From: Laetmonice hystrix
Taxonomy: Eukaryota
DNA length: 64,000 nucleotides
Assembly (NCBI GenBank): GCA_965235115.1
Contig: OZ249436.1
Span: forward strand, 46,252,001-46,316,000
Direction: 5' to 3'
Shown here: in pieces, positions 4,790 through 37,334 of the stretch
Layout of the letters: the number at the start of each line of letters is the position of its first letter
Position numbering within the stretch: the first letter of the stretch is position 1
Translations under genes and position numbers: made by a program
Notes under the pieces: generated by a model
Database searches by the model: none
Seen by the model: the letters and a program-made list of their open reading frames with translations, nothing else
What the model was told of the DNA's origin: nothing

Positions 4790-5270
4790 AGGGAGTCGTA
4801 AAATTCATTTTTTTCGATTTATGGCAGTCTTAGAAACATATGATTCGCATACCTTGGACTCCCAGTAACATCATGTGAGACTGTTATGGCCCAGCGACCA
4901 GTATTTAGTAAGGAAAATATGCCAAATCTCTCGCAAATACGTAGCTCAGAATTAGCGAGCGGTGATCACGTGACTTCCGGGTGTGGAAGGGAATCTCCCT
5001 CTAGTCTAGTGTTGACCTAAATACCGCATGTACACCCGGAAGTCACGTGATCACGCGTCATCATCGCCCGACCGCGGCCAACTCAAATATCCTGTGGGCC
5101 GCTCGCTAATTCTGAGCTACGTATTTGCGAGAGATTTGGCATATTTTTCTTACTAAATACTGGTCGCTGGGCCATAACAGTCTCACATGATGTTACTGGG
5201 AGTCCAAGGTATGCGAATCATATGTTTCTAAGACTGCCATAAATCGAAAAAATGAATTTTACGACTCCCT
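4790..5270. mobile_element. Non-autonomous DNA transposon (MITE), Kolobok-type, with long near-perfect inverted arms
   Basis: Termini AGGGAGTCGTAAAATTCA...TGAATTTTACGACTCCCT with TTAA on both sides (4786-4789, 5271-5274). Arms are about 180 bp, with an inner inverted pair GTGATCACGTGACTTCCGGGTGT / ACACCCGGAAGTCACGTGATCAC. A TTAA TSD with purine-rich AGG termini fits Kolobok better than piggyBac, whose termini start CCC. Confidence 0.85.
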
Positions 5271-6975
5271 TTAAGGGTTAAGGTTAACATACAATCACCC
5301 TTGACGAAATGTCTTTTTTGAAGTAAAGTTTACAAGTTACGTGCTGCAAGGTCAGTGAAACTGCACAAGCCAAGCTGGCTGCGTTCATGTTACCATGGCT
5401 GTTGCTAAGGTGTAAAACATCAATCCAAATTCCAATAACACCCTAACTGATTGATTTTTTTCAGTTTATTTTTCAGTTAACCAAGGGTTGGATTTGACCC
5501 AGACTAGTATTCACGACAAAAGAAAAGGACAGAAAAATGAGAAAAATGAGTTCTGACCCAGAGCCCCTGGCCAGTACGTTCACAGTCCTCATTCCTCACT
5601 ATTATATGTTCATATGAAGCCCGTACCGGAAGGGAAGGTTGAAAGCCCGCCCTGAATGTTCTCCTCCGCGACAGGAGATCTAACGATGGTGTCGCTGTCT
5701 ATTTCCTGTTCCGGCTGGCCCTGTCGTGTACATCCGGGACTCACAGACCCAGGACCGGCGTCGCTGAAAGATCCTCCTGTCACAGACGTCACTATAGCAA
5801 CACCCGTCACAACGACGTCTCAGAAATGTATTGGTTAACAGCTCGTTAAAGATTTACATTGCAAACTCGCATTTCCTACGTACGTCGTGCAGGAATGTTT
5901 TGGCGATGGTAAGAAGGTCAATCTGGAATTCACAGAGCACTGGAAATAACGTTTGCACAAAACATTTGTTGATGGCATTGAGGAGGATAGTTCTGGTGGT
6001 AGAGGCATTAGTTAGTATACATGTACATACACGTATTAGAATTCACTATCGTCGTATTGTTATGTCATTCAATGGTTAATACTACACCTTTTCCCGAACT
6101 ATCTTCACCGTCAGCTTTGTTGTCTGAAGGTTCTAATATTTGTGGCGCGTATTAATTTCATATCTAATTACAGTTTAATTTGAAGACAATGCCCCATTTT
6201 TCTTTCCTTTTCTTTTGTCGTGAATACTAGATGAGTTCGGATTTTGTATATACGATATAATTATTCTATGCACGAGGAGATGACAATTTCCTCTCATTTA
6301 CGGAATATCTTCTTTTATCTTTAAATCAAGTTGTTTTTTCCAAGTCTACGAGATCGTTTGTAGTGGCTTCGCAAGAATCTTCAAATTGGATTTGATATTT
6401 ATTAATGCTGGTTGTTCTCCCATTGACTCCAGTGGAGATATTGATTAAATCTGGGAGACTTCTGCGAGCTAATAACTAGACTGAGTGAAAATGATTTGAT
6501 ATTGTCTATTAAAGTGCGATGAGCATTGACTCTATGTATTTTTGAGTTCTGCTGCTAGCAGCCACTTTCATTAAAACTCCCCTTAATAACTATGCACTTT
6601 TCTAGCAATGAAATAAAGATTTCAATTTGTGAGCAGCTTGACAAATCAGATTTACGTTCTCCCGCCTCCAGCCTTGCACCATAAGGTTTGAAAAGAAAAA
6701 TATGTAGAAAGCAATTACGTATCATTGCGAGTTAGTCTCATAATTTACGTTTACACATTTGGATTTGATTAGGGCACGGTTTGTAATTATAAAGCATTTT
6801 GCTGTGATTTAGAAGGGAAGTTGTTGTCTACCATGCCAGGCGGACAAGTCAATTTACCTTTTTGTACAGAACTGTAATCATGCATAGTTAAGTAGTAAGA
6901 ATTTTAATCTGTAGCCAAACTTGACGATCAATTATCACTTTGCACACGGAGAATCACCAGTCGAGATTAACCGTG

Positions 6976-9900
6976 GGTGTGACTAAATACCGGAATCCCC
7001 CGGAATCCCTTGGAATTTACCGGAATCCCCTGGAATCTACAGGAATCCCCGGAATCTACCGGAATCCCCCGGAATCCCCCGGAATCTACCGGAATCTACC
7101 GGAATCCCCCCGGCTTTGGGCTCGGAAGGCCCCAGAGTGTCCCTGGAGCACATTGGAATCCGCCGGACTTTGCCGGATTTGACACAATTCGAGAAAAGGG
7201 CAAGTGACTAAATACCGGAATCCCCATGTATCTCTCTAATTTACCCCAAAATGTACCGGAATCCCCCCGGCTTTGGGCTCGGAAGGCCCCAGAGTGTCCC
7301 TGGAGCACATTGGAATCCGCCGGACTTTGCCGGATTTGACACAATTCGAGAAAAGGGCAATTGACTAAATACCGGAATCCCCCTGTATCTCTCTAATTTA
7401 CCCCAAAATGTACCGGAATCCCCCCGGCTTTGGGCTCGGAAGGCCCCAGAGTGTCCCTGGAGCACATTGGAATCCGCCGGACTTTGCCGGATTTGACACA
7501 ATTCGAGAAAAGGGCAAGTGACTAAATACCGGAATCCCCCTGTATCTCTCTAATTTACGCCAAAATGTACCGGAATCTCCCCGGCTTTGGGCTCGGAAGG
7601 CCCCAGAGTGTCCCTGGAGCACATTTGAATCCGCCGGACTTTGCCGGATTTGACACAATTCGAGAAAAGGGCAATTGACTAAATACCGGAATCCCCCTGT
7701 ATCTCTCTAATTTACCCCAAAATGTACCGGAATCTCCCCGGCTTTGGGCTCGGAAGGCCCCAGAGTGTCCCTGGAGCACATTGGAATCCGCCGGACTTTG
7801 CCGGATTTGACACAATTCGAGAAAAGGGCAAGTGACTAAATACCGGAATCCCCCTGTATCTCTCTAATTTACCCCAAAATGTACCGGAATCCCCCCGGCT
7901 TTGGGCTCGGAAGGCCCCAGAGTGTCCCTGGAGCACATTGGAATCCGCCGGACTTTGCCGGATTTGACACAATTCGAGAAAAGGGCAAGTGACTAAATAC
8001 CGGAATCCCCCTGTATCTCTCTAATTTACGCCAAAATGTACCGGAATCTCCCCGGCTTTGGGCTCGGAAGGCCCCAGAGTGTCCCTGGAGCACATTGGAA
8101 TCCGCCGGACTTTGCCGGATTTGACACAATTCGAAAAAAGGGCAATTGACTAAATACCGGAATCCCCCTGTATCTCTCTAATTTACGCCAAAATGTACCG
8201 GAATCTCCCCGGCTTTGGGCTCGGAAGGCCCCAGAGTGTCCCTGGAGCACATTGGAATCCGCCGGACTTTGCCGGATTTGACACAATTCGAGAAAAGGGC
8301 AATTGACTAAATACCGGAATCCCCCTGTATCTCTCTTATTTACCCCAAAATGTACCGGAATCTCCCCGGCTTTGGGCTCGGAAGGCCCCAGAGTGTCCCT
8401 GGAGCACATTGGAATCCGCCGGACTTTGCCGGATTTGACACAATTCGAGAAAAGGGCAAGTGACTAAATACCGGAATCCCCCTGTATCTCTCTAATTTAC
8501 CCCAAAATGTACCGGAATCCCCCCCGGCTTTGGGCTCGGAAGGCCCCAGAGTGTCCCTGGAGCACATTGGAATCCGCCAGACTTTGCCGGATTTGACACA
8601 ATTCGAGAAAAGGGCAAGTGACTAAATACCGGAATCCCCCTGTATCTCTCTAACTTACCCCAAAATGTACCGGAATCCCCCCGGCTTTGGGCTCGGAAGG
8701 CCCCAGAGTGTCCCTGGAGCACATTGGAATCCGCCGGACTTTGCCGGATTTGACACAATTCGAGAAAAGGGCAATTGACTAAATACCGGAATCCCCCTGT
8801 ATCTCTCTTATTTACCCCAAAATGTACCGGAATCCCCCCGGCTTTGGGCTCGGAAAGCCCCAGAGTGTCCCTGGAGCACATTGGAATCCGCCGGACTTTG
8901 CCGGATTTGACACAATTCGAGAAAAGGGCAATTGACTAAATACCGGAATCCCCCTGTATCTCCCTAATTTACCCCAAAATGTACCGGAATCCCCCCGGCT
9001 TTGGGCTCGGAAGGCCCCAGAGTGTCCCTGGAGCACATTGGAATCCGCCGGACTTTGCCGGATTTGACACAATTCGAGAAAAGGGCAAGTGACTAAATAC
9101 CGGAATCCCCCTGTATCTCTCTAATTTACCCCAAAATGTACCGGAATCCCCCCGGCTTTGGGCTCGGAAGGCCCCAGAGTGTCCCTGGAGCACATTGGAA
9201 TCCGGCGGACTTTGCCGGATTTGACACAATTCGAGAAAAGGGCAATTGACTAAATATCGGAATCCCCCTGTATCTCCCTAATTTACCCCAAAATGTACCG
9301 GAATCCCCCCGGCTTTGGGCTCGGAAGGCCCCAGAGTGTCCCTGGAGCACATTGGAATCCGCCGGACTTTGCCGGATTTGACACAATTCGAGAAAAGGGC
9401 AAGTGACTAAATACCGGAATCCCCCTGTATCTCTCTAATTTACCCCAAAATGTACCGGAATCTCCCCGGCTTTGGGCTCGGAAGGCCCCAGAGTGTCCCT
9501 GGAGCACATTGGAATCCGCCGGACTTTGCCGGATTTGACACAATTCGAGAAAAGGGCAATTGACTAAATACCGGGATCCCCCTGTATCTCCCTAATTTAC
9601 CCCAAAATGTACCGGAATCCCCCCGGCTTTGGGCTCGGAAGGCCCCAGAGTGTCCCTGGAGCACATTGGAATCCGCCGGACTTTGCCGGATTTGACACAA
9701 TTCGAGAAAAGGGCAAGTGACTAAATACCGGAATCCCCCTGTATCTCTCTAATTTACCCCAAAATGTACCGGAATCTCCCCGGCTTTGGGCTCGGAAGGC
9801 CCCAGAGTGTCCCTGGAGCACATTGGAATCCGCCGGACTTTGCCAGATTTGACACAATTCGAGAAAAGGGCAATTGACTAAATACCGGAATCCCCCTGTA

Positions 9901-10140
9901 TCTCCCTAATTTACCCCAAAATGTACCGGAATCCCCCCGGCTTTGGGCTCAGAAGGCCCCAGAGTGTCCCTGGAGCACATTGGAATCCGCCGGACTTTGC
10001 CGGATTTGACACAATTCGAGAAAAGGGCAAGTGACTAAATACCGGAATCCCCCTGTATCTCTCTAATTTACCCCAAAATGTACCGGAATCCCCCCGGCTT
10101 TGGGCTCGGAAGGGCCCAAAGTATCCCTGGAGCACATTGG
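6976..10140 (+). repeat. Left arm: 10-bp CCGGAATCCC/CCGGAATCTA run, then about 19 copies of a 157-bp satellite
   Basis: GTGACTAAATACCGGAATCCCC recurs every 157 bp; the repeated 86-aa ORFs in the track are spaced 157 bp apart. Confidence 0.97.
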
Positions 10141-11862
10141 AACTTTGTAGTTCCCCCGTTTAGATTTGGTGAGTTCGTTCCTATTTTAGTTTCGTTTCAC
10201 ACTAGATCAGGGGCGATGCACAAGATCTCACGGATTTGGGGGCTTTTTTATTTAAATGTTTATGTTTAGTCGGCAAAAACGAGGTCATGCGCTACGGCTA
10301 AATCCAAAGTAACACCCAGTTTGATACAAAAATAAAATTAACCCTAGGCCAGACGCTAATCATTACCAAAGCAATTAGTTTGGTATTAGTGAAAATAGGA
10401 TTATTTACCCAATGCTGGCTAAGTATGCCCTTTCTAAATTTATCCAAATATAACCCCCCAAAATGCACAGAATGCACCATTTTTAATGTAAGAGTTCTCA
10501 TTTTTCAGGGGGAGCAGACTCCCTGACCCCCCCCCCCCCTCATATATTTCTTGAATACTGCCAGGTTATTTTGTGGCTTTTACAGTGTTCGCTTCACAAG
10601 TCGCTACAGGCCAGGGGGTGTCGTTGTGGCGCGTCATCTAGTACTCACTAGCTGATGTCGAACGAAGTTTCTGGAGTAGTCTGATGTTAGGCCCGATTCC
10701 ACCCATTGGAAAAGAGTGGACGTGCAAGTTACATTCTTCCTTGTCAGCATCTCCACGGCGACTTACACCAAAACTTGCTGGACTATGTGGAGAACGTACA
10801 CCTGAGGAATTACGCCAGGCGGTGGTCCATCCTCTGTTTGAAAATATTGAGCGCGGCTCCCGGGGAGGATCTGAACTGCCCAGTGCTATTATCATCTGAT
10901 TGTGAAGTTGTCTGCACCTAATAGGTAATATTAACGAACGAATGTGAAGATAATATAAATTGATTAACTGAACAAATAGCTTTAGTTGCAGTGTTGAACA
11001 CTGGGAGGTGCCACATGACCTTCGGAGGAGAAATTGTTCAAGCCCACCACCACCCCTTCGCCTCCATAAGGGGTCGGATGCCGTCTGTTGTCTGGATTTT
11101 ACAGCTGCCTTTACGCTTTTCCAGGGTTTTACCTACATAAGTAGTATTTATACCTGGTTTTTAGTGCGGAAGGTTGGCGCCTAATGGGGCAAGTTAATAA
11201 GTTCCAGACTCGTGGTTTCGCTCAAATATGTCAGCTCCTTTGGAAGTTTACTGTCTCATTGGTGTTGAAAGTTTTACTTCCCTGGATCAGATGCAATAAT
11301 ACGTATTTATAGTTTTCTATATTATGTATACATGTTATATAACGGCGAGGCTTCCCGTTCTTTTATCTATGCATGTCACATTTGAGTCTGAAAAGAAATT
11401 ACTTTAATAGAGAAATTAACCGGCTTTTTACTGTTTATTATTTGTACAGTATAATCAATAACACGCATATATGAGTTTCGATATTATGTGTTAAACCTTG
11501 ACATAATTACTTATTCAAGGTTATTGTATAGTCCCTTCATAGGTGATGGGCGGAATTTAACTTTTTTGTGTGAGTCCCCTATCGACGGGATACAATGCAA
11601 ATAAAATCTAATCTACAATGCCATCCTTCTTTCCGAGTTTGGACTTTATAAATACTACACTTCACTCTTGCAAGAGTTCAGAAACATTGTCAGTGCCCAT
11701 TCAAACGACTCAGGAGACTCCGGCTCGGCAGATACTGGTCCAGATATTCAAAATGTCACATGGGTAACATGACAAGAGTATTTGTGAGAAAAGGGACAGA
11801 AATAAAATGTAGAACATAAACAGAACAATTAATATTTTTTATTTATGAAATTAATTTCCCTC

Positions 11863-14536
11863 CTGGGATACTCTGGGTCCTTCTGAGCCCATATTTGGGG
11901 GGATTACGGTACATTTTGGGGTAAATTAGAGAGATACAGGGGGATTCCGGTATTTAGTCACTTGCCCTTTTCTCGAATTGTGTCAAATCCGGCAAAGTCC
12001 GGCGGATTCCAATGTGCTCCAGGGACATTCTGGGGCCTTCCGAGCCCAAAGCCGGGGGGATTCCGGTACATTTTGGGGTAAATTAGAGAGATACAGGGGG
12101 ATTCCGGTATTTAGTCACTTGCCCTTTTCTCGAATTGTGTCAAATCCGGCAAAGTCCGGCGGATTCCAATGTGCTCCAGGGACATTCTGGGGCCTTCCGA
12201 GCCCAAAGCCGGGGGGATTCCGGTACATTTTGGGGTAAATTAGAGAGATACAGGGGGATTCCGGTATTTAGTCATTTTGCCTTTTCTCAAATTGTGTCAA
12301 ATCCGGCAAAGTCCGGCGGATTCCAATGTGCCCCAGGGACACTCTGGGGCCTTCCGAGCCCAAAGCCGGGGGGATTCCGGTACATTTTGGGGTAAATTAG
12401 AGAGATACAGGGGGATTCCGGTATTTAGTCATTTGCCCTTTTCTCGAATTGTGTCAAATCCTGCAAGGTCCGGCGGATTCCAATGTGCTCCAGGGACATT
12501 CTGGGGCCTTCCGAGCCCAAAGCCGGGGGGATTCCGGTACATTTTGGGGTAAATTAGAGAGATACAGGGGGATTCCGGTATTTAGTCATTTGCCCTTTTC
12601 TCGAATTGTGTCAAATCCGGCAAAGTCCGGCGGATTCCAATGTGCTCCAGGGACATTCTGGGGCCTTCCGAGCCCAAAGCCGGGGGGATTCCGGTACATT
12701 TTGGGGTAAATTAGAGAGATACAGGGGGATTCCGGTATTTAGTCACTTGCCCTTTTCTCGAATTGTGTCAAATCCGGCAAAGTCTGGCGGATTCCAATGT
12801 GCTCCAGGGACATTCTGGGCCCTTCCGAGCCCAAAGCCGGGGGGATTCCGGTACATTTTGGGGTAAATTAGAGAGATACAGGGGGATTCCGGTATTTAGT
12901 CATTTTGCCTTTTCTCGAATTGTGTCAAATCCGGCAAAGTCCGGCGGATTCCAATGTGCCCCAGGGACACTCTGGGGCCTTCCGAGCCCAACGCCGGGGG
13001 GATTCCGGTACATTTTGGGGTAAATTAGAGAGATACAGGGGGATTCCGGTATTTAGTCATTTGCCCTTTTCTCGAATTGTGTCAAATCCGGCAAAGTCCG
13101 GCGGATTCCAATGTGCTCCAGGGATACTCTGGGCCCTTCCGAGCCCAAAGCCGGGGGGATTCCGGTACATTTTGGGGTAAATTAGAGAGATACAGGGGGA
13201 TTCCGGTATTTAGTCATTTTGCCTTTTCTCGAATTGTGTCAAATCCGGCAAAGTCCGGCGGATTCCAATGTGCTCCAGGGACATTCCAATGTGCTCCAGG
13301 GACATTCTGGGGCCTTCCGAGCCCAAAGCCGGGGGGATTCCGGTACATTTTGGGGTAAATTAGAGAGATACAGGGGGATTCCGGTATTTAGTCATTTGCC
13401 CTTTTCTCGAATTGTGTCAAATCCGGCAAAGTCCGGCGGATTCCAATGTGCTCCAGGGACATTCTGGGGCCTTCCGAGCCCAAAGCCGGGGGGATTCCGG
13501 TACATTTTGGGGTAAATTAGAGAGATACAGGGGGATTCCGGTATTTAGTCACTTGCCCTTTTCTCGAATTGTGTCAAATCCGGCAAAGTCCGGCGGATTC
13601 CAATGTGCCCCAGGGACACTCTGGGGCCTTCCGAGCCCAAAGCCGGGGGGATTCCGGTACATTTTGGGGTAAATTAGAGAGATACAGGGGGATTCCGGTA
13701 TTTAGTCATTTGCCCTTTTCTCGAATTGTGTCAAATCCGGCAAAGTCCGGCGGATTCCAATGTGCTCCAGGGACATTCTGGGGCCTTCCGAGCCCAAAGC
13801 CGGGGGATTCCGGTACATTTTGGGGGTAAATTAGAGAGATACAGGGGGATTCCGGTATTTAGTCATTTGCCCTTTTCTCGAATTGTGTCAAATCCGGCAA
13901 AGTCCGGCGGATTCCAATGTGCCCCAGGGACATTCTGGGGCCTTCCGAGCCCAAAGCCGGGGGGATTCCGGTACATTTTGGGGTAAATTAGAGAGATACA
14001 GGGGGATTCCGGTATTTAGTCACTTGCCCTTTTCTCGAATTGTGTCAAATCCGGCAAAGTCCGGCGGATTCCAATGTGCTCCAGGGACATTCTGGGCCCT
14101 TCCGAGCCCAAAGCCGGGGGGATTCCGGTACATTTTGGGGTAAATTAGAGAGATACAGGGGGATTCCGGTATTTAGTCACTTGCCCTTTTCTCGAATTGT
14201 GTCAAATCCGGCAAAGTCCGGCGGATTCCAATGTGCTCCAGGGACATTCTGGGCCCTTCCGAGCCCAAAGCCGGGGGGATTCCGGTACATTTTGGGGTAA
14301 ATTAGAGAGATACAGGGGGATTCCGGTATTTAGTCATTTTGCCTTTTTTCGAATTGTGTCAAATCCGGCAAAGTCCGGCGGATTCCAATGTGCTCCAGGG
14401 ATACTTTGGGCCCTTCTGAGCCCATATTCGAGGGGATTCCGGTAGATTCCGGGGGATTCCGGTAGATTCCGGGGAATTCCGGTAGATTCCGGGGGATTCC
14501 GGGGGATTCCGGGGGATTCCGGTATTTAGTCACACC
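11863..14536 (-). repeat. Right arm: about 16 copies of the same 157-bp satellite in reverse orientation, then the 10-bp run
   Basis: GGATTCCGGTATTTAGTCA recurs every 157 bp; there is one internal 21-bp duplication near 13285-13305. Confidence 0.97.
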
Positions 14537-14647
14537 GTTAACGGTTTATAACCCAGGCTTTGTTTCAACATTCCACGTGTTAGTAGAGGAATGGCACTGA
14601 TTATCAAAGGACAGCTACACGCAGTTATTATGGTTCCTGAAAGCAGA

Positions 14648-16005
14648 TTCATGACATCAGGACTAACGGACTCGGATACACTTGGGTCATGGTGACAACT
14701 TGGGACATCAGGACCAACTGACTCGGACACACTTGGGGCAGGGTGACAACTTGGGACATCAGGACTAACGGACTCAAATACACTTGGGTCATGGTGACAA
14801 CTTGGGACATCAGGACCAACTGACTCGGATACACTTGGGGCAGGGTGACAACTAGGGACATCAGGACTAACTGACTCGGATACACTTGGGGCATGGTGAC
14901 AACTAGGGACATCAGGACCAACTGACTCGGATACACTTGGGGCAGGGTGACAACTTGGGACATCAGGACCAACTGACTCGGATACACTGGGGCAGGGTGA
15001 CAACTTGGGACATCAGGACCAACTGACTCGGATACACTTGGGGCAGGGTGACAACTTGGGACATCAGGACCAACTGACTCGGATACACTTGGGGCAGGGT
15101 GACAACTTGGGACATCAGGACGAACTGACTCGGATACACTTGGGGCAGGGTGACAACTTGGGACATCAGGACCAACTGACTCGGATACACTTGGGGCATG
15201 GTGACAACTAGGGACATCAGGACTAACTGACTCGGATACACTTGGGGCATGGTGACAACTTGGGACATCAGGACCAACTGACTCGGATACACTTGGGTCA
15301 TGGTGACAACTTGGGACATCAGGACCAACTGACTCGGATACACTTGGGGCATGGTGACAACTTGGGACATCAGGACCAACTGACTCGGATACACTTGGGT
15401 CATGGTGACAACTTGGGACATCAGGACCAACTGACTCGGATACACTTGGGTCATGGTGACAACTTGGGACATCAGGACTAACTGACTCGGATACACTTGG
15501 GGCAGGGTGACAACTAGGGACATCAGGACCAACGGACTCGGATACACTTGGGGCAGGGTGACAACTAGGGACATCAGGACCAACTGACTCGGATACACTT
15601 GGGACAGGGTGACAACTTGGGACATCAGGACTAACTGACTCGGATACACTTGGGGCATGGTGACAACTTGGGACATCAGGACCAACTGACTCGGATACAC
15701 TTGGGTCATGGTGACAACTTGGGACATCAGGACCAACTGACTCGGATACACTTGGGGCATGGTGACAACTTGGGACATCAGGACCAACTGACTCGGATAC
15801 ACTTGGGTCATGGTGACAACTTGGGACATCAGGACTAACTGACTCGGATACACTTGGGGCAGGGTGACAACTAGGGACATCAGGACCAACGGACTCGGAT
15901 ACACTTGGGTCATGGTGACAACTTGGGACATCAGGACTAACTGACTCGGATACACTTGGGGCAGGGTGACAACTTGGGACATCAGGACCAACGGACTCGG
16001 ATACT
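14648..16005. repeat. 51-bp minisatellite, about 27 copies
   Basis: Unit CATCAGGACCAACTGACTCGGATACACTTGGGGCAGGGTGACAACTTGGGA. Confidence 0.97.
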
Positions 16006-34765: not shown

Positions 34766-35619
34766 CAAAAGTGTTATTACATCCCGCTGCCTGGCTGTCC
34801 TTTAGTCTCATCACCAGCAAAGATCAAACTTGGGTATAGTCTTTGAAGCGGTCAACTAAAGCCCCGGCGTGGTGCGACGTGAGGGTGTTCGTTCATGTCG
34901 TCCGGATCAAAGCCACTTTGGTGTCTGCCTCTCTATCTCCACATCAAAAGTAGGAAATGAAGATTATAACAAATGGCAGCTGCTGCAACTCATCATCAAG
35001 ATTATTAATGTTCCCAGCTGTGATGACGTCTCCTGTATCGTGATTATAAAGGCAGCGTTAAGAAGTGCGCCTTAAAACACGCCATATGTGTAAAGGGTTA
35101 ATGCAATTTTGTATCCTATTAGTGGTAGCGTCCGAGTGGTCAAGTGGGGCTGCTGTAACGTGGAAGACAAATCATCCACTAAGTTCATTCTCCGCTCGGT
35201 GGTGAGCGGGCCGGCCTGGCTTGATGGAGCACTCAATTTAGCCGTCGCTCCCTTTTTTGCAAACGTGAGAATTATACTGATGCCCATTATCATGTTTCGT
35301 AAATGTGTAATCTGTGTGTTTAATGTGGTATGTTTATGAGATTATAGGATGAGGCTTTCCGGGTGGATTTCTATAGCTGGCCTATAGATTAAGCTTTCCG
35401 ACTGGTAATCCTTGGAGTCAGACGGACAGCTTGTCTGCCTCTGGAGGACCTGCAGGAGGAGGAGGAGCTGAGAGGAAGGTCAAGGTGGTGGCGGCTACAT
35501 CCATTCCTCCTGCACCTCCTCCTCCTCCTGTGCTGCATCAGATGACCTTGGGTAAGCATGATGGAGGGCCAGGTTGATGAGGTATCTAATGAAGTCAGCA
35601 GACAGCGGTGGGAATGGCT

Positions 35620-35971
35620 GTGTATAACCCTGGCCAGTTGGTCTCAACAACCCGGCACTGGCCGTGTATAACCCTGACCAGTTGGTCTCCACAATCCGGC
35701 ACTGGCCGTGTATAACCCTGACCAGTTGGTCTCCACAATCCGGCACTGGCCGTGTATAACCCTGACCAGTTGGTCTCCACAATCCGGCACTGGCCGTGTA
35801 TAACCCTGACCAGTTGGTCTCCACAATCCGGCACTGGCCGTGTATAACCCTGACCAGTTGGTCTCCACAATCCGGCGCTGGTCGTGTATAACCCTGACCA
35901 GTTGGTCTCCACAATCCGGCACTGGCCGTGTATAACCCTGACCAGTTGGTCTCCACAATCCGGCACTGGCC
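35620..35971. repeat. 44-bp minisatellite, 8 copies
   Basis: Unit GTGTATAACCCTGACCAGTTGGTCTCCACAATCCGGCACTGGCC. Confidence 0.95.
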
Positions 35972-36970
35972 TAAAGTCCAGCGACCTCTATACTCACTGC
36001 ACCGCCCTTGGTACCAGGAGTATGGAAAAATACACAGCCAGGGAAGGAACTCGTATCGGGGGCCGTTCTACATCCCAAATCAAGGTGTTTCTACAGGATC
36101 CTGACAATCATGCTGATGGATCGTCCTATGAAATTTATACGACTTAATCTAGGAATGGAGAAATAGGATTGTGTTATGATTGCCATATAACGCCGGGAGA
36201 TTGTCCATTCGAAGCTGTGGTGAACAACGAGATAGCACTAACCACATCGCTGGCTTGTTGCTGATCAGAAAACAATAGCAGAGCGGGGTGCAGGCACAGG
36301 CATCATATGAAAAGGGACATAAAAAAGATCTCATCATACGACATGTACTAAAAAACGGAATCCCGTTGATTAAGACTTGTGACAGATCAACGGAAATTAC
36401 CTTTCTAACGACAAGGGAGTGCGCTGCGAGCGTCATTATGCTGGGATGGAAGTTGCAAAAACAACAAATGGTTATTTTGTTCATTCTCTATAAATTGCCT
36501 CAATTTCTGTCACAACATACTAAAGATTTGTTCACCTTTGTCACCCCTATCACATTGAATATGATAGTATCTGAAAAATTTCTTTTAGCATTCCTTATTA
36601 TAATCAGCATAAACCTGAGTTAGTTGAGAAAGCTAGAACCTCACCAAGGTCGCTAACCTGATAAACACACCACAGTAAAACATATACCTGGTGGTGACTA
36701 CATTCAGAGAACAGGATAACGGTCATAATTATTATTATCCGGTTTGAAAAAAAGGATAGACATGTTTAAACTCGATGTTGCTATACTTTGTTATGTAATT
36801 CAGCGCACGTATCTAACATATACGTAGCCATCCTGCTCGACCACATGCTTTCCAGAGCATGCGTGGTCCGACGTTCCCGTTGTACTTCCGGTGGGCGTGA
36901 CGTCACAAAACGGGTGATAATGAAGGTTGATAACATAGGCCTAAGTCTAGAAACAGTAGAATGAAGATCT

Positions 36971-37100
36971 CCTCTCCCCTTTGTGACATCACGGCCTGCG
37001 CTCCCCCTCCCCTTTGTGACATCACGGCCTGCGCTCCCTCCCCTTGGTGACATCACGGCCTGCGCCCCCTCCCCTTGGTGACATCACGGCCTGCCCCCCC
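36971..37100. repeat. 31-33-bp repeat x4 carrying GTGACATCAC (duplicate near 41297-41427)
   Basis: GTGACATCACGGCCTGC at 36983, 37016, 37047 and 37078. Confidence 0.85.
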
Positions 37101-37262
37101 CCTCCCCCGATAAGACCGCCTCTCCCGACAGAACACTACTGTCCTACATGTGCAGACCGGAACGGGGCGGACGAGGCCTGCCGCCGCACCATGTCATGCA
37201 TGAATCGGTATTGCAGACCAAAACCGCATTTGTATTTAGTCCTTCCCTTGAGCTATCATGGC

Positions 37263-37334
37263 GGCTTGTTGGTCTAGGGGCATGATTCTCGCTTTGGGTG
37301 CGAGAGGTCCCGGGTTCAAATCCCGGACAAGCCC
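37263..37334 (+). tRNA. trnP: tRNA-Pro (anticodon TGG)
   Basis: GGCTTGTTGGTCTAGGGGCATGATTCTCGCTTTGGGTGCGAGAGGTCCCGGGTTCAAATCCCGGACAAGCCC, 72 nt. It matches the metazoan tRNA-Pro body with intact stems and A/B boxes, and has a TTTTT terminator 3 bp downstream. Confidence 0.95.

What the first reader, a model, noticed from the sequence alone, without database searches (positions are those of the whole stretch)
6976..14536. 7.5 kb foldback element whose arms are satellite arrays amplified from its own terminus
Seen: two arrays of the same 157-bp monomer face each other in inverted orientation (about 19 and 16 copies) around a 1.7 kb unique core. They are capped by exact inverted ends GGTGTGACTAAATACC / GGTATTTAGTCACACC. 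Every monomer contains GTGACTAAATACCGGAATCCCC, a copy of the element end. Just inside each end is a run of 10-bp CCGGAATCCC/CCGGAATCTA units, about one helical turn each. A candidate 8-bp TSD with one mismatch flanks the element (TTAACCGT 6967-6974, TTAACGGT 14538-14545). Established: Drosophila FB, Galileo and other foldback transposons have arms made of tandem subrepeats. Inference: this is a non-autonomous foldback-type DNA transposon that carries and seeds a satellite, the CCGGAATCC motifs are phased transposase-binding sites, and it can form a stem of about 2.7 kb.
Basis: partly seen in the sequence, partly recalled or inferred. Interest (0 to 1): 0.75.

Follow-up and report, generated by a model that had tools for sequence, protein, structure and literature searches.

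The report
Foldback transposon with satellite arms
This is a real, recently mobile "foldback" jumping gene whose two mirror-image arms are tandem 157-bp repeats; it is a gene-less deletion copy of a much larger relative that carries a Mutator-type transposase reading frame, so it is a well-documented new member of a known kind.

Summary
Window 6975-14537 is a 7,563-bp element. It has two inverted 157-bp arrays (19.4 and 16.4 copies; arms 96.7% alike over 2,676 columns), 10-bp CCGGAATCCC runs at both ends, and an abutting 8-bp duplication with one mismatch.

It is one of about 60 copies. The 34-nt end occurs 127 times in this 627-Mb marine animal genome and never in the reversed control. Of 16 sampled copies with one end of each type, 11 have 8-bp duplications (five perfect), two have 9 bp and three have none.

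Most copies have no centre. The window's 1.7-kb "core" is not unique. It is 99.5-99.7% identical to the interior of two giant copies (33 and 44 kb), and each of those holds an open frame of more than 1,000 codons with a Pfam MULE match. The 33-kb copy has its own 7/8 duplication. The window copy is therefore an internally deleted, non-autonomous Mutator-type foldback, like Drosophila FB-NOF, nematode Tm1 or Tetris.

I could not fetch or read the ORF sequence. Satellite "seeding" and transposase binding to the 10-bp units are untested.

The scan has already reported other foldback families in this genome, on other DNA.

Novelty: new member of a known kind. Interest about 0.35.

The parts
6967..6974 (+). 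Left copy of the 8-bp target-site duplication (TTAACCGT)
   Evidence: Abuts the corrected left end. It matches 14538-14545 at 7 of 8 positions, with the mismatch at position 6.
6975..7000 (+). L-type terminus GGGTGTGACTAAATACCGGAATCCCC
   Evidence: Conserved at 26 distinct L ends with unrelated flanks. Contigs from another sample break exactly at 6974/6975 (table 7).
6990..7110 (+). Subterminal run of 10-bp units CCGGAATCCC / CCGGAATCTA (12 copies; 20-bp super-unit)
   Evidence: Tandem Repeats Finder. The L-type run carries the diagnostic CCCTTGGAATTTA.
7093..10142 (+). Left arm: 157-bp monomer array, 19.4 copies
   Evidence: Tandem Repeats Finder, 97% matches. Each monomer holds a copy of the terminal motif and two CCGGAATC sites. 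The G/T variant at monomer column 111 alternates over parts of the array.
10143..11859 (+). Non-coding core: remnant of the interior of the ORF-bearing giant copies
   Evidence: 99.5-99.7% identical to C7:28869197-28870911 and C6:28206998-28208709. The core/right-arm junction is identical in the window, C7, C6 and L058. No Pfam or Rfam match.
10926..11463 (+). 5'-truncated fragment of an unrelated dispersed repeat inside the core
   Evidence: Core positions 784-1321 match more than 40 loci at 72-87%. The other loci extend further 5'.
11860..14448 (-). Right arm: the same 157-bp monomer inverted, 16.4 copies (one 178-bp variant unit at 13105-13464)
   Evidence: Tandem Repeats Finder. R-arm monomers carry variants at monomer columns 37, 46 and 111 that are shared across copies.
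14432..14524 (-). Subterminal 10-bp repeat run of the R end
   Evidence: Tandem Repeats Finder. R-type (CCCCCGGAATCCC...).
14512..14537 (-). R-type terminus (read inward: CGGTGTGACTAAATACCGGAATCCCC)
   Evidence: A leading C is conserved at 14 of 17 R ends.
14538..14545 (+). Right copy of the target-site duplication (TTAACGGT)

Best explanation
The element at window 6975-14537 is a non-autonomous, internally deleted member of a young foldback DNA-transposon family in a marine animal genome.

**Structure.** Each arm is built of three parts: a 26-nt terminus, a run of 10-bp CCGGAATCCC units, and a variable number (1.5 to 36) of 157-bp monomers that each repeat the terminal motif.

**Movement.** The family moves by cut-and-paste and makes 8-bp (sometimes 9-bp) target duplications.

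**Likely enzyme.** The most likely transposase is the Mutator-type (MULE) protein encoded by an open frame of more than 1,000 codons in two giant copies of the family (33 and 44 kb). The window copy keeps only the last 1.7 kb of their interior.

**What is shown.** The family, its ends, the duplications, the deletion lineage, and the position of a MULE-domain open frame between family ends.

**What is inferred.**
- That this protein is the active transposase.
- That it binds the 10-bp units and the terminal motif.
- That arm arrays grow and shrink by unequal exchange.
- That recombination between the inverted arms flips the interior.
For: **A dispersed family with defined ends**
- 127 family ends in the genome against 0 in the control. 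At least 33 convergent pairs lie 0.4-9.5 kb apart.

**Target duplications**
- Among 16 copies with one L and one R end: five perfect 8-bp duplications, four at 7/8, two at 6/8, two 9-bp repeats (9/9 and 8/9), and three with none.
- Non-cognate flank pairs reach 7/8 once in 462.

**The whole foldback transposes**
- L060 and L065 share one centre junction but have different sites and duplications.
- L- and R-arm monomer variants are inherited across copies.

**Link to a MULE reading frame**
- Pfam MULE hits over the curated cut-off (29.9 bits, genome-wide E 3.3e-4) lie in stop-free frames of 1,157 and 1,088 codons, at C6:28199689 and C7:28858749.
- Both hits lie inside the family end pairs C6:28175835..28220040 and C7:28844227..28877519.
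- Both lie 7-10 kb from sequence that is 99.5-99.7% identical to the window core.
- The core/arm junction is identical in all four related copies.
- The 33-kb C7 copy has its own 7/8 duplication (ATCGTGGC / ATTGTGGC). Its L-end flank occurs nowhere else in the genome, so the C6 copy sits at a different site.

**Other superfamilies**
- No P, hAT or IS1595/Merlin domain hit lies near any listed end.

**Literature**
- MULEs have long TIRs and 8-10 bp duplications. [quoted passage not shown] Muta1 subterminal repeats strengthen transposase binding and cleavage (PMC5499845).
- Most foldback elements appear to be Mutator-type (PMC4079207).
- Tm1 has asymmetric end motifs, tandem-repeat TIRs, 8-10 bp duplications and a single MULE-encoding copy (PMC3169594).
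Against: - Its DDE residues, its other domains and its relation to NOF/Phantom are therefore unread.
- The MULE match is weak and covers only model positions 38-99.
- No SWIM zinc-finger hit lies in these frames.
- The ORF could belong to a separate MULE nested inside the giant copies. However, it has no other copy in the genome.
- An 8-bp duplication also fits hAT or P.
- Three of 16 copies lack duplications, and about half of the duplications are imperfect.
Confidence: 0.8

Rival explanations
1. It is a foldback transposon, but it is mobilised by a hAT- or P-type transposase encoded elsewhere. On this reading the MULE open frame in the giant copies is a passenger or a nested element.
For: An 8-bp duplication is the hallmark size for hAT and for the P element. 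Galileo shows that foldback architecture occurs in the P superfamily (PMC3688188, PMC3573991). An earlier scan note (s1-344650) reports a P-like transposase linked to another foldback MITE in this genome. The MULE match is weak.
Against: None of the 88 Tnp_P_element hits or 53 hAT-dimerisation hits lies within or beside any listed family end. The termini do not look like short hAT TIRs. Two copies have 9-nt duplications, which fits MULE (8-10 bp) better than hAT. This MULE frame has only two copies in the genome, and both lie between family ends.
Confidence: 0.13
2. The window copy was not made by transposition. Instead it was copied in during double-strand-break repair, using another copy as template. 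The flanking 'duplication' would then be microhomology.
For: The duplication is imperfect (7/8). L053 and L059 share 15/16 nt immediately outside their R ends although their flanks are otherwise unrelated. Three copies lack duplications.
Against: Five perfect 8-bp duplications flush with both ends, and a fixed length of 8-9 nt, are what a staggered transposase cut produces. Microhomology joins do not give this pattern. The ends are precise to the base at all loci.
Confidence: 0.04
3. It is not a mobile element at all. It is either a local palindromic satellite block or an assembly artefact of an inverted array.
For: Long inverted arrays are hard to assemble. No read-level confirmation of this particular locus was obtained.
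Against: The same architecture, with precise ends and different flanks, is found at more than 30 loci on many contigs. Contigs from an independent sample break exactly at the end position 6974/6975.
Confidence: 0.02

Closest known systems
Drosophila Foldback (FB / FB-NOF)
   Same: The arms are long inverted repeats built of tandem subrepeats of variable number. Most copies have little or no centre. A few large copies carry a coding insert. The literature assigns most foldback elements to the Mutator superfamily (PMC4079207).
   Different: FB makes 9-bp duplications and has shorter subrepeats (my own knowledge). Here the duplication is mostly 8 bp, the monomer is 157 bp, and the outermost base of the two ends differs (G vs C). 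Homology of the ORF to NOF was not tested.
Tm1 Mutator/Foldback family of root-knot nematodes (PMC3169594)
   Same: Asymmetric outer end motifs. TIRs made of variable numbers of tandem repeats. 8-10 bp duplications, some with mismatches. Copies with the same end motif on both sides that lack a duplication. Very few MULE-encoding copies among many non-coding ones.
   Different: Tm1 repeats are 13-15 bp and its duplications are mostly 9 bp. Here the repeats are 10-bp units plus 157-bp satellite-like monomers, in arms up to about 5.7 kb. The candidate autonomous copies are 33-44 kb.
Muta1 of Aedes aegypti (PMC5499845, PMC5225508)
   Same: It is a MULE classed as a foldback element because its TIR consists of subterminal tandem repeats. 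Those repeats increase transposase binding and are needed for cleavage, which is the best experimental precedent for the 10-bp units here.
   Different: Muta1 has 145-bp TIRs and a proven active transposase. Nothing here has been tested biochemically.
Tetris of Drosophila virilis (PMC4079207)
   Same: A foldback transposon whose TIR tandem repeats (about 220 bp) are satellite-like. Duplications of 8-10 bp. Assigned to Mutator on that basis.
   Different: For Tetris no coding copy was found, and an independent satellite derived from it is documented. Here a candidate coding copy exists, but independent satellite blocks were not demonstrated.
Galileo (P superfamily foldback-like element; PMC3688188, PMC3573991)
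   Same: Long, internally repetitive TIRs with multiple transposase-binding sites. Great structural variation among copies, including chimeric copies.
   Different: Galileo encodes a THAP/P-type transposase and makes 7-bp duplications (my own knowledge). No P-type domain lies near this family's ends.

Membership tests
Foldback-type DNA transposon (structural class) | Long terminal inverted repeats composed of tandem subrepeats, with arm length varying between copies | tested here: met
   Arms hold 1.5-36 monomers in the 21 sampled copies. The window arms are 96.7% alike over 2,676 columns.
Foldback-type DNA transposon (structural class) | Dispersed copies with identical precise ends, different flanks and target-site duplications | tested here: met
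   127 ends against 0 in the control. 13 of 16 L/R copies have 8-9 bp duplications.
Foldback-type DNA transposon (structural class) | Most copies lack a coding centre | tested here: met
   In most copies the + array abuts the - array directly. No transposase-like ORF of 130 aa or more in any fetched locus.
Mutator / MULE superfamily | Target-site duplication of 8-10 bp and TIRs longer than 100 bp (PMC5499845) | tested here: met
   8 bp in 11 copies and 9 bp in 2 copies. The arms are kilobases long.
Mutator / MULE superfamily | An autonomous member with the same termini encodes a MULE-domain (DDE) transposase | tested here: inconclusive
   Pfam MULE hits over the cut-off lie in 1,088- and 1,157-codon open frames, inside two family end pairs. 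One of these pairs has a 7/8 duplication. The protein sequence could not be fetched, so the catalytic residues are unread.
Mutator / MULE superfamily | SWIM or other zinc finger accompanying the MULE domain | tested here: not met
   No Pfam SWIM hit in or near the C6/C7 frames. FLYWCH, the Phantom-type finger, was not tested. This feature is not universal.
hAT superfamily | hAT transposase (dimerisation domain) associated with the termini; short TIRs; strict 8-bp duplication | tested here: not met
   None of the 53 Dimer_Tnp_hAT hits is near a family end. The TIRs are long. Two copies have 9-nt duplications.
P superfamily (Galileo-like foldbacks) | P-type transposase associated with the termini | tested here: not met
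   None of the 88 Tnp_P_element hits is near a family end.
Satellite DNA seeded by a transposon (as for Tetris) | The monomer also forms long head-to-tail arrays outside elements | not tested
   All listed monomer hits lie at loci that also hold family ends, but only 38 of 289 candidate loci were scored. Summed word depth in another sample hints at many more monomers than the assembly shows. This is not a reliable copy number.

The most novel reading that the evidence does not exclude
Two side observations could be more than ordinary.

**(1) Polar scars in the duplications.** The imperfect target duplications are one-sided. With the L end placed on the left, 9 of 10 mismatches in eight imperfect 8-bp duplications fall in the three bases touching the L end. 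Two further copies have one extra base there. This would fit 1-3 nt of donor flank travelling with one transposon end, that is, an offset first nick at the L end only. It would be a natural record of the cleavage chemistry of an animal MULE/foldback transposase.

**(2) Outward palindrome growth.** The arms appear to nucleate growth of the palindrome into neighbouring DNA. One copy (L057) and a whole second family ('B': 25 ends, L/L inner ends, about 1.1-kb extra arms) have flanks that are inverted copies of each other, starting right at the foldback ends. Family B moves with different termini (TGTGGCGG...), and the one complete pair read has a 5-bp duplication. This suggests that fold-back duplication built a new mobile family served by a different transposase.
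Probability: 0.25. Interest if true: 0.55.

Novelty: new member of a known kind. Interest (0 to 1): 0.35.

Why it matters
For most foldback families with satellite-like arms, such as Tetris, no coding partner is known. This family has a candidate: an intact open frame of more than 1,000 codons with a MULE match, sitting between family ends in two giant copies. It also has clear deletion derivatives, of which the window copy is one.

That makes it directly testable which enzyme moves satellite-armed foldbacks in this marine animal, whether the phased 10-bp units are its binding sites, and how such elements spread 157-bp repeats around a genome.

The young age, the many copies and the kilobase-scale hairpin potential also make these loci likely hot spots for rearrangement. 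As a kind of element, however, it is not new.

Tried and rejected
- **Fetching more genome sequence.** The remaining 13 end pairs and the ORF region could not be fetched.
- **Other transposase domains.** Searches of the genome for P-element, hAT and IS1595/Merlin domains gave no hit near any family end. A SWIM search gave none in the C6/C7 frames.
- **Coding or RNA content of the window element.** No Pfam match to the core ORFs. No Rfam match at 6900-14700. No ORF of 130 aa or more that looks like a transposase in any of the 82 fetched loci.
- **Origin of the main family from family B.** I considered that the main family arose from family B by a CpG-to-TpG change creating a new end (GGGCGTGAC to GGGTGTGAC). 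I rejected this as the main reading. The main family has its own ORF-bearing copies and makes 8-bp duplications. Family B has L-type inner ends on both sides, and its one readable pair has a 5-bp duplication. Family B is better explained as a fold-back duplication of half an element plus its flank.
- **Inversion between two copies lacking duplications.** L051 and L055 lie 2.7 Mb apart on C1 and both lack duplications. Their flanks are not exchanged.
- **Read evidence for an empty site.** Only contigs from one other sample were available. They leave the reference at 6955, 20 nt before the element, and their letters are not shown.
- **Naming the organism.** Run labels are coded, and the window has no conserved coding exon.
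- **Literature search for the end sequence.** No paper contains it. The Phantom paper (PMC2927773) is not held.


Full report
**1. What is in the window**

- Tandem Repeats Finder reports a 157-bp array at 7093-10142 (19.4 copies, 97% matches). The same unit in reverse complement lies at 11860-14448 (16.4 copies).
- Runs of 10-bp CCGGAATCCC/CCGGAATCTA units lie just inside both ends, at 6990-7110 and 14432-14524.
- An end-anchored alignment of the left arm with the reverse complement of the right arm gives 2,676 aligned columns at 96.7% identity. A single strand could therefore fold into a stem of about 2.7 kb.

**2. It is a dispersed family with precise, slightly asymmetric ends**

- The window is C1:46252001-46316000 of a 627-Mb, 35-contig animal assembly. 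A 2016 marine metagenome holds a contig of the same 157-bp array.
- The 34-nt end pattern occurs 127 times in the genome (58 forward, 69 reverse) and never in the reversed control. At least 33 convergent pairs lie 0.4 to 9.5 kb apart on many contigs.
- One end type ('L') always reads GGGTGTGACT and is followed by CCCTTGGAATTTA in the 10-bp run.
- The other type ('R') reads CGGTGTGACT inward and has a plain CCCCCGGAATCCC run.
- The window element is therefore 6975-14537 (7,563 bp), with L on the left and R on the right.
- Contigs from an independent sample break exactly at 6974/6975 when laid on the window, which supports that boundary (table 7).

**3. Target-site duplications**

I read both flanks of 22 copies.
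- Sixteen copies have one L end and one R end. Of these, five have perfect 8-bp duplications flush with both ends, four match at 7/8 (including the window, TTAACCGT / TTAACGGT), two match at 6/8, two have 9-nt repeats (9/9 and 8/9), and three have none.
- Among 462 non-cognate flank pairs only one reaches 7/8.
- L060 and L065 have the same idiosyncratic centre junction but different sites and different perfect duplications. The whole foldback therefore moves as a unit.
- End regions of many copies are 98-99% identical, so the family is young.

**4. Most copies have no centre, and the arms evolve as arrays**

- In most of the 21 sampled copies the + array abuts the - array directly, at a different monomer phase in each copy. 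Arm sizes range from 1.5 to 36 monomers.
- Across 403 monomers, identity is 97.5% within an arm, 96.9% between the arms of one element, 96.8% between elements for the same arm type, and 96.4% for opposite arm types.
- Three monomer columns carry R-arm-enriched variants shared across elements.
- L and R arms are thus separate lineages inherited through transposition, with mild local homogenisation. This points to unequal exchange within arms rather than repeated re-creation of the palindrome.
- The terminal 26 nt aligns with an internal stretch of the monomer (GGGCAAGTGACT...). The 21-nt core of the end occurs 18 times in the left arm and 17 times in the right. The exact 22-nt form occurs only 11 and 7 times.

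**5. The 'unique core' is a deletion remnant of ORF-bearing giant copies**

- The 1,717-bp core (10143-11859) is 99.5-99.7% identical to C7:28869197-28870911 and C6:28206998-28208709. Its last 328 bp also survive in the copy L058.
- The junction between the core end and the adjoining arm is identical to the base in all four copies. The array beyond it stays in register at about 97% for more than 1.4 kb.
- In the window and in L058, the other side of the remnant is joined to the opposite arm at the same monomer phase (...CACATTGGAA|). This looks like the ancestral inner boundary of the arm.
- The C7 and C6 sequences lie inside end pairs 33.3 kb (C7:28844227..28877519) and 44.2 kb (C6:28175835..28220040) apart.
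- A genome-wide Pfam MULE search gives two hits over the curated cut-off (29.9 bits, genome-wide E 3.3e-4). One is at C7:28858749 in a stop-free frame of 1,088 codons. The other is at C6:28199689 in a frame of 1,157 codons.
- These are the only two copies of that frame, and both lie inside the giant end pairs, 7-10 kb from the core.
- The C7 copy has its own duplication, ATCGTGGC before the R end and ATTGTGGC after the L end (7/8). Its L-end flank occurs nowhere else in the genome, so the C6 copy sits elsewhere.
- Relative to the L and R ends, the core is inverted in the window compared with C7, C6 and L058. Recombination between inverted arms would produce exactly this flip.
- The core itself is non-coding. 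It contains a 5'-truncated fragment of another dispersed repeat at 10926-11463.

**6. Which transposase**

- Searches for P-element, hAT and IS1595/Merlin domains give many hits, but none lies near a family end.
- Most foldback elements appear to be Mutator-type (PMC4079207).
- Tm1 of root-knot nematodes shows the same combination: asymmetric end motifs, tandem-repeat TIRs, 8-10 bp duplications, same-end copies without duplications, and a single MULE-encoding copy (PMC3169594).
- My best reading is therefore a Mutator-superfamily foldback. I give about 0.65 to the superfamily assignment and more than 0.9 to 'foldback transposon'.
No SWIM finger hit lies in these frames.

**7. Read evidence**

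- Only Logan contigs from one other sample of the same (coded) organism were available.
- They cover the left flank with about 1% differences. They leave the reference at 6955, 20 nt before the element, and then run on for 172-225 letters unlike the laid stretch. No listed contig joins this flank to the element.
- This hints that the insertion or its neighbourhood differs in that sample. It does not show a clean empty site.
- The inversion itself is not in doubt, given more than 30 loci with the same architecture.

**8. Side observations**

- **(a) Polar mismatches.** With the L end on the left, 9 of 10 mismatches in the eight imperfect 8-bp duplications (the seven of section 3 plus the C7 copy) lie at positions 6-8, next to the L end. 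The two 9-nt cases have their extra base there. A uniform spread would give this with a probability of about 0.001, although I chose the positions after seeing the data. Carry-over of a few donor-flank bases with the L end is one possible cause.
- **(b) Shared flank.** L053 and L059 share 15/16 nt just outside their R ends but nothing further out.
- **(c) Fold-back growth.**
  - Copies with the variant inner end GGGCGTGACT are not at element ends. Their flanks are inverted repeats of each other for about 1.1 kb. They end in different termini (TGTGGCGGCACGATTTGACCC plus repeats of about 20 bp), which occur 25 times in the genome.
  - The one complete pair I could read has a 5-bp duplication (AGGCG). 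An uninterrupted paralogous target lies beside L062.
  - L057 shows the same palindromic flanks at a single locus, with R-type ends on both sides.
  - Fold-back duplication of half an element plus its flank explains both cases.

**9. Verdict**

- The kind is known (FB, Tm1, Muta1, Tetris, Galileo).
- Earlier notes of this scan describe other satellite-armed foldback families in the same genome (s1-317215, s1-319923, s1-327611), and probably another copy of this 157-bp family (s1-334747).
- What this follow-up adds is the candidate coding partner and the deletion lineage.
- 'Seeding of a satellite' and binding to the 10-bp units remain untested.

Noticed in passing
L071-L082; complete copy C21:1388648-1393110 (L076+L073): A second foldback family ('B'). 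It has about 1.1-kb extra arms ending in TGTGGCGGCACGATTTGACCC, followed by repeats of about 20 bp. These arms enclose L-type inner ends of the 157-bp family (GGGCGTGACT) on both sides. There are 25 ends and about 9 pairs in the genome. The one pair I could read has a 5-bp duplication (AGGCG), and an uninterrupted paralogous target lies beside L062.
   Followed up: partly
L057 (C2:21427047-21430948): This copy has R-type ends on both sides. Its 200-bp flanks are near-perfect inverted repeats of each other (1 mismatch in the 110 nt shown). It looks like outward fold-back duplication of half an element plus its flank.
   Followed up: partly
Flanks of window 6975/14537, L022, L052, L053, L058, L059, L067 and C7:28844218/28877520: Mismatches in imperfect target duplications cluster in the three bases next to the L end (9 of 10). 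Two copies have one extra base there.
   Followed up: partly
L053 and L059, first 16 nt outside the R end: The two loci share GTCCTGGGTGGWGTTG (15/16 identical), although their flanks are otherwise unrelated. Either flank sequence was carried along with the element, or this is an insertion hot spot.
   Followed up: partly
window 6955: Contigs from another sample of the same organism leave the reference 20 nt before the element. They run on for 172-225 unlike letters and none joins the flank to the element. This may be a structural polymorphism at the insertion site.
   Followed up: partly
G000 C1:28,828,000-28,919,000 and C13:27,885,000-27,915,000: Long tandem arrays of units about 2.2 kb and 1.62 kb long. 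Each unit holds a fragment matching the P-element transposase domain, so these are transposase-derived macro-satellites.
   Followed up: no
window 14653-16004: A 51-bp minisatellite (26.5 copies) starts only 115 bp from the element's right end. It gives a spurious stop-free frame of 452 codons.
   Followed up: no
window 35615-44294: Tandem Repeats Finder arrays recur at a 4,325-bp offset (35615/39940, 36974/41300, 39370/43697), together with a duplicated 264-aa ORF that has no Pfam match. This indicates a tandem duplication of about 4.3 kb.
   Followed up: no
L005:96-1404 (C7:28867111-28868419): A 52-bp satellite (about 25 copies) and a tandem duplicate of the first 542 bp of the core lie inside the 33-kb giant copy. 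They sit between the MULE frame and the core.
   Followed up: no
window 5200-5275: This stretch has very high summed word depth in the other sample's contigs, so another high-copy repeat ends at about 5275.
   Followed up: no
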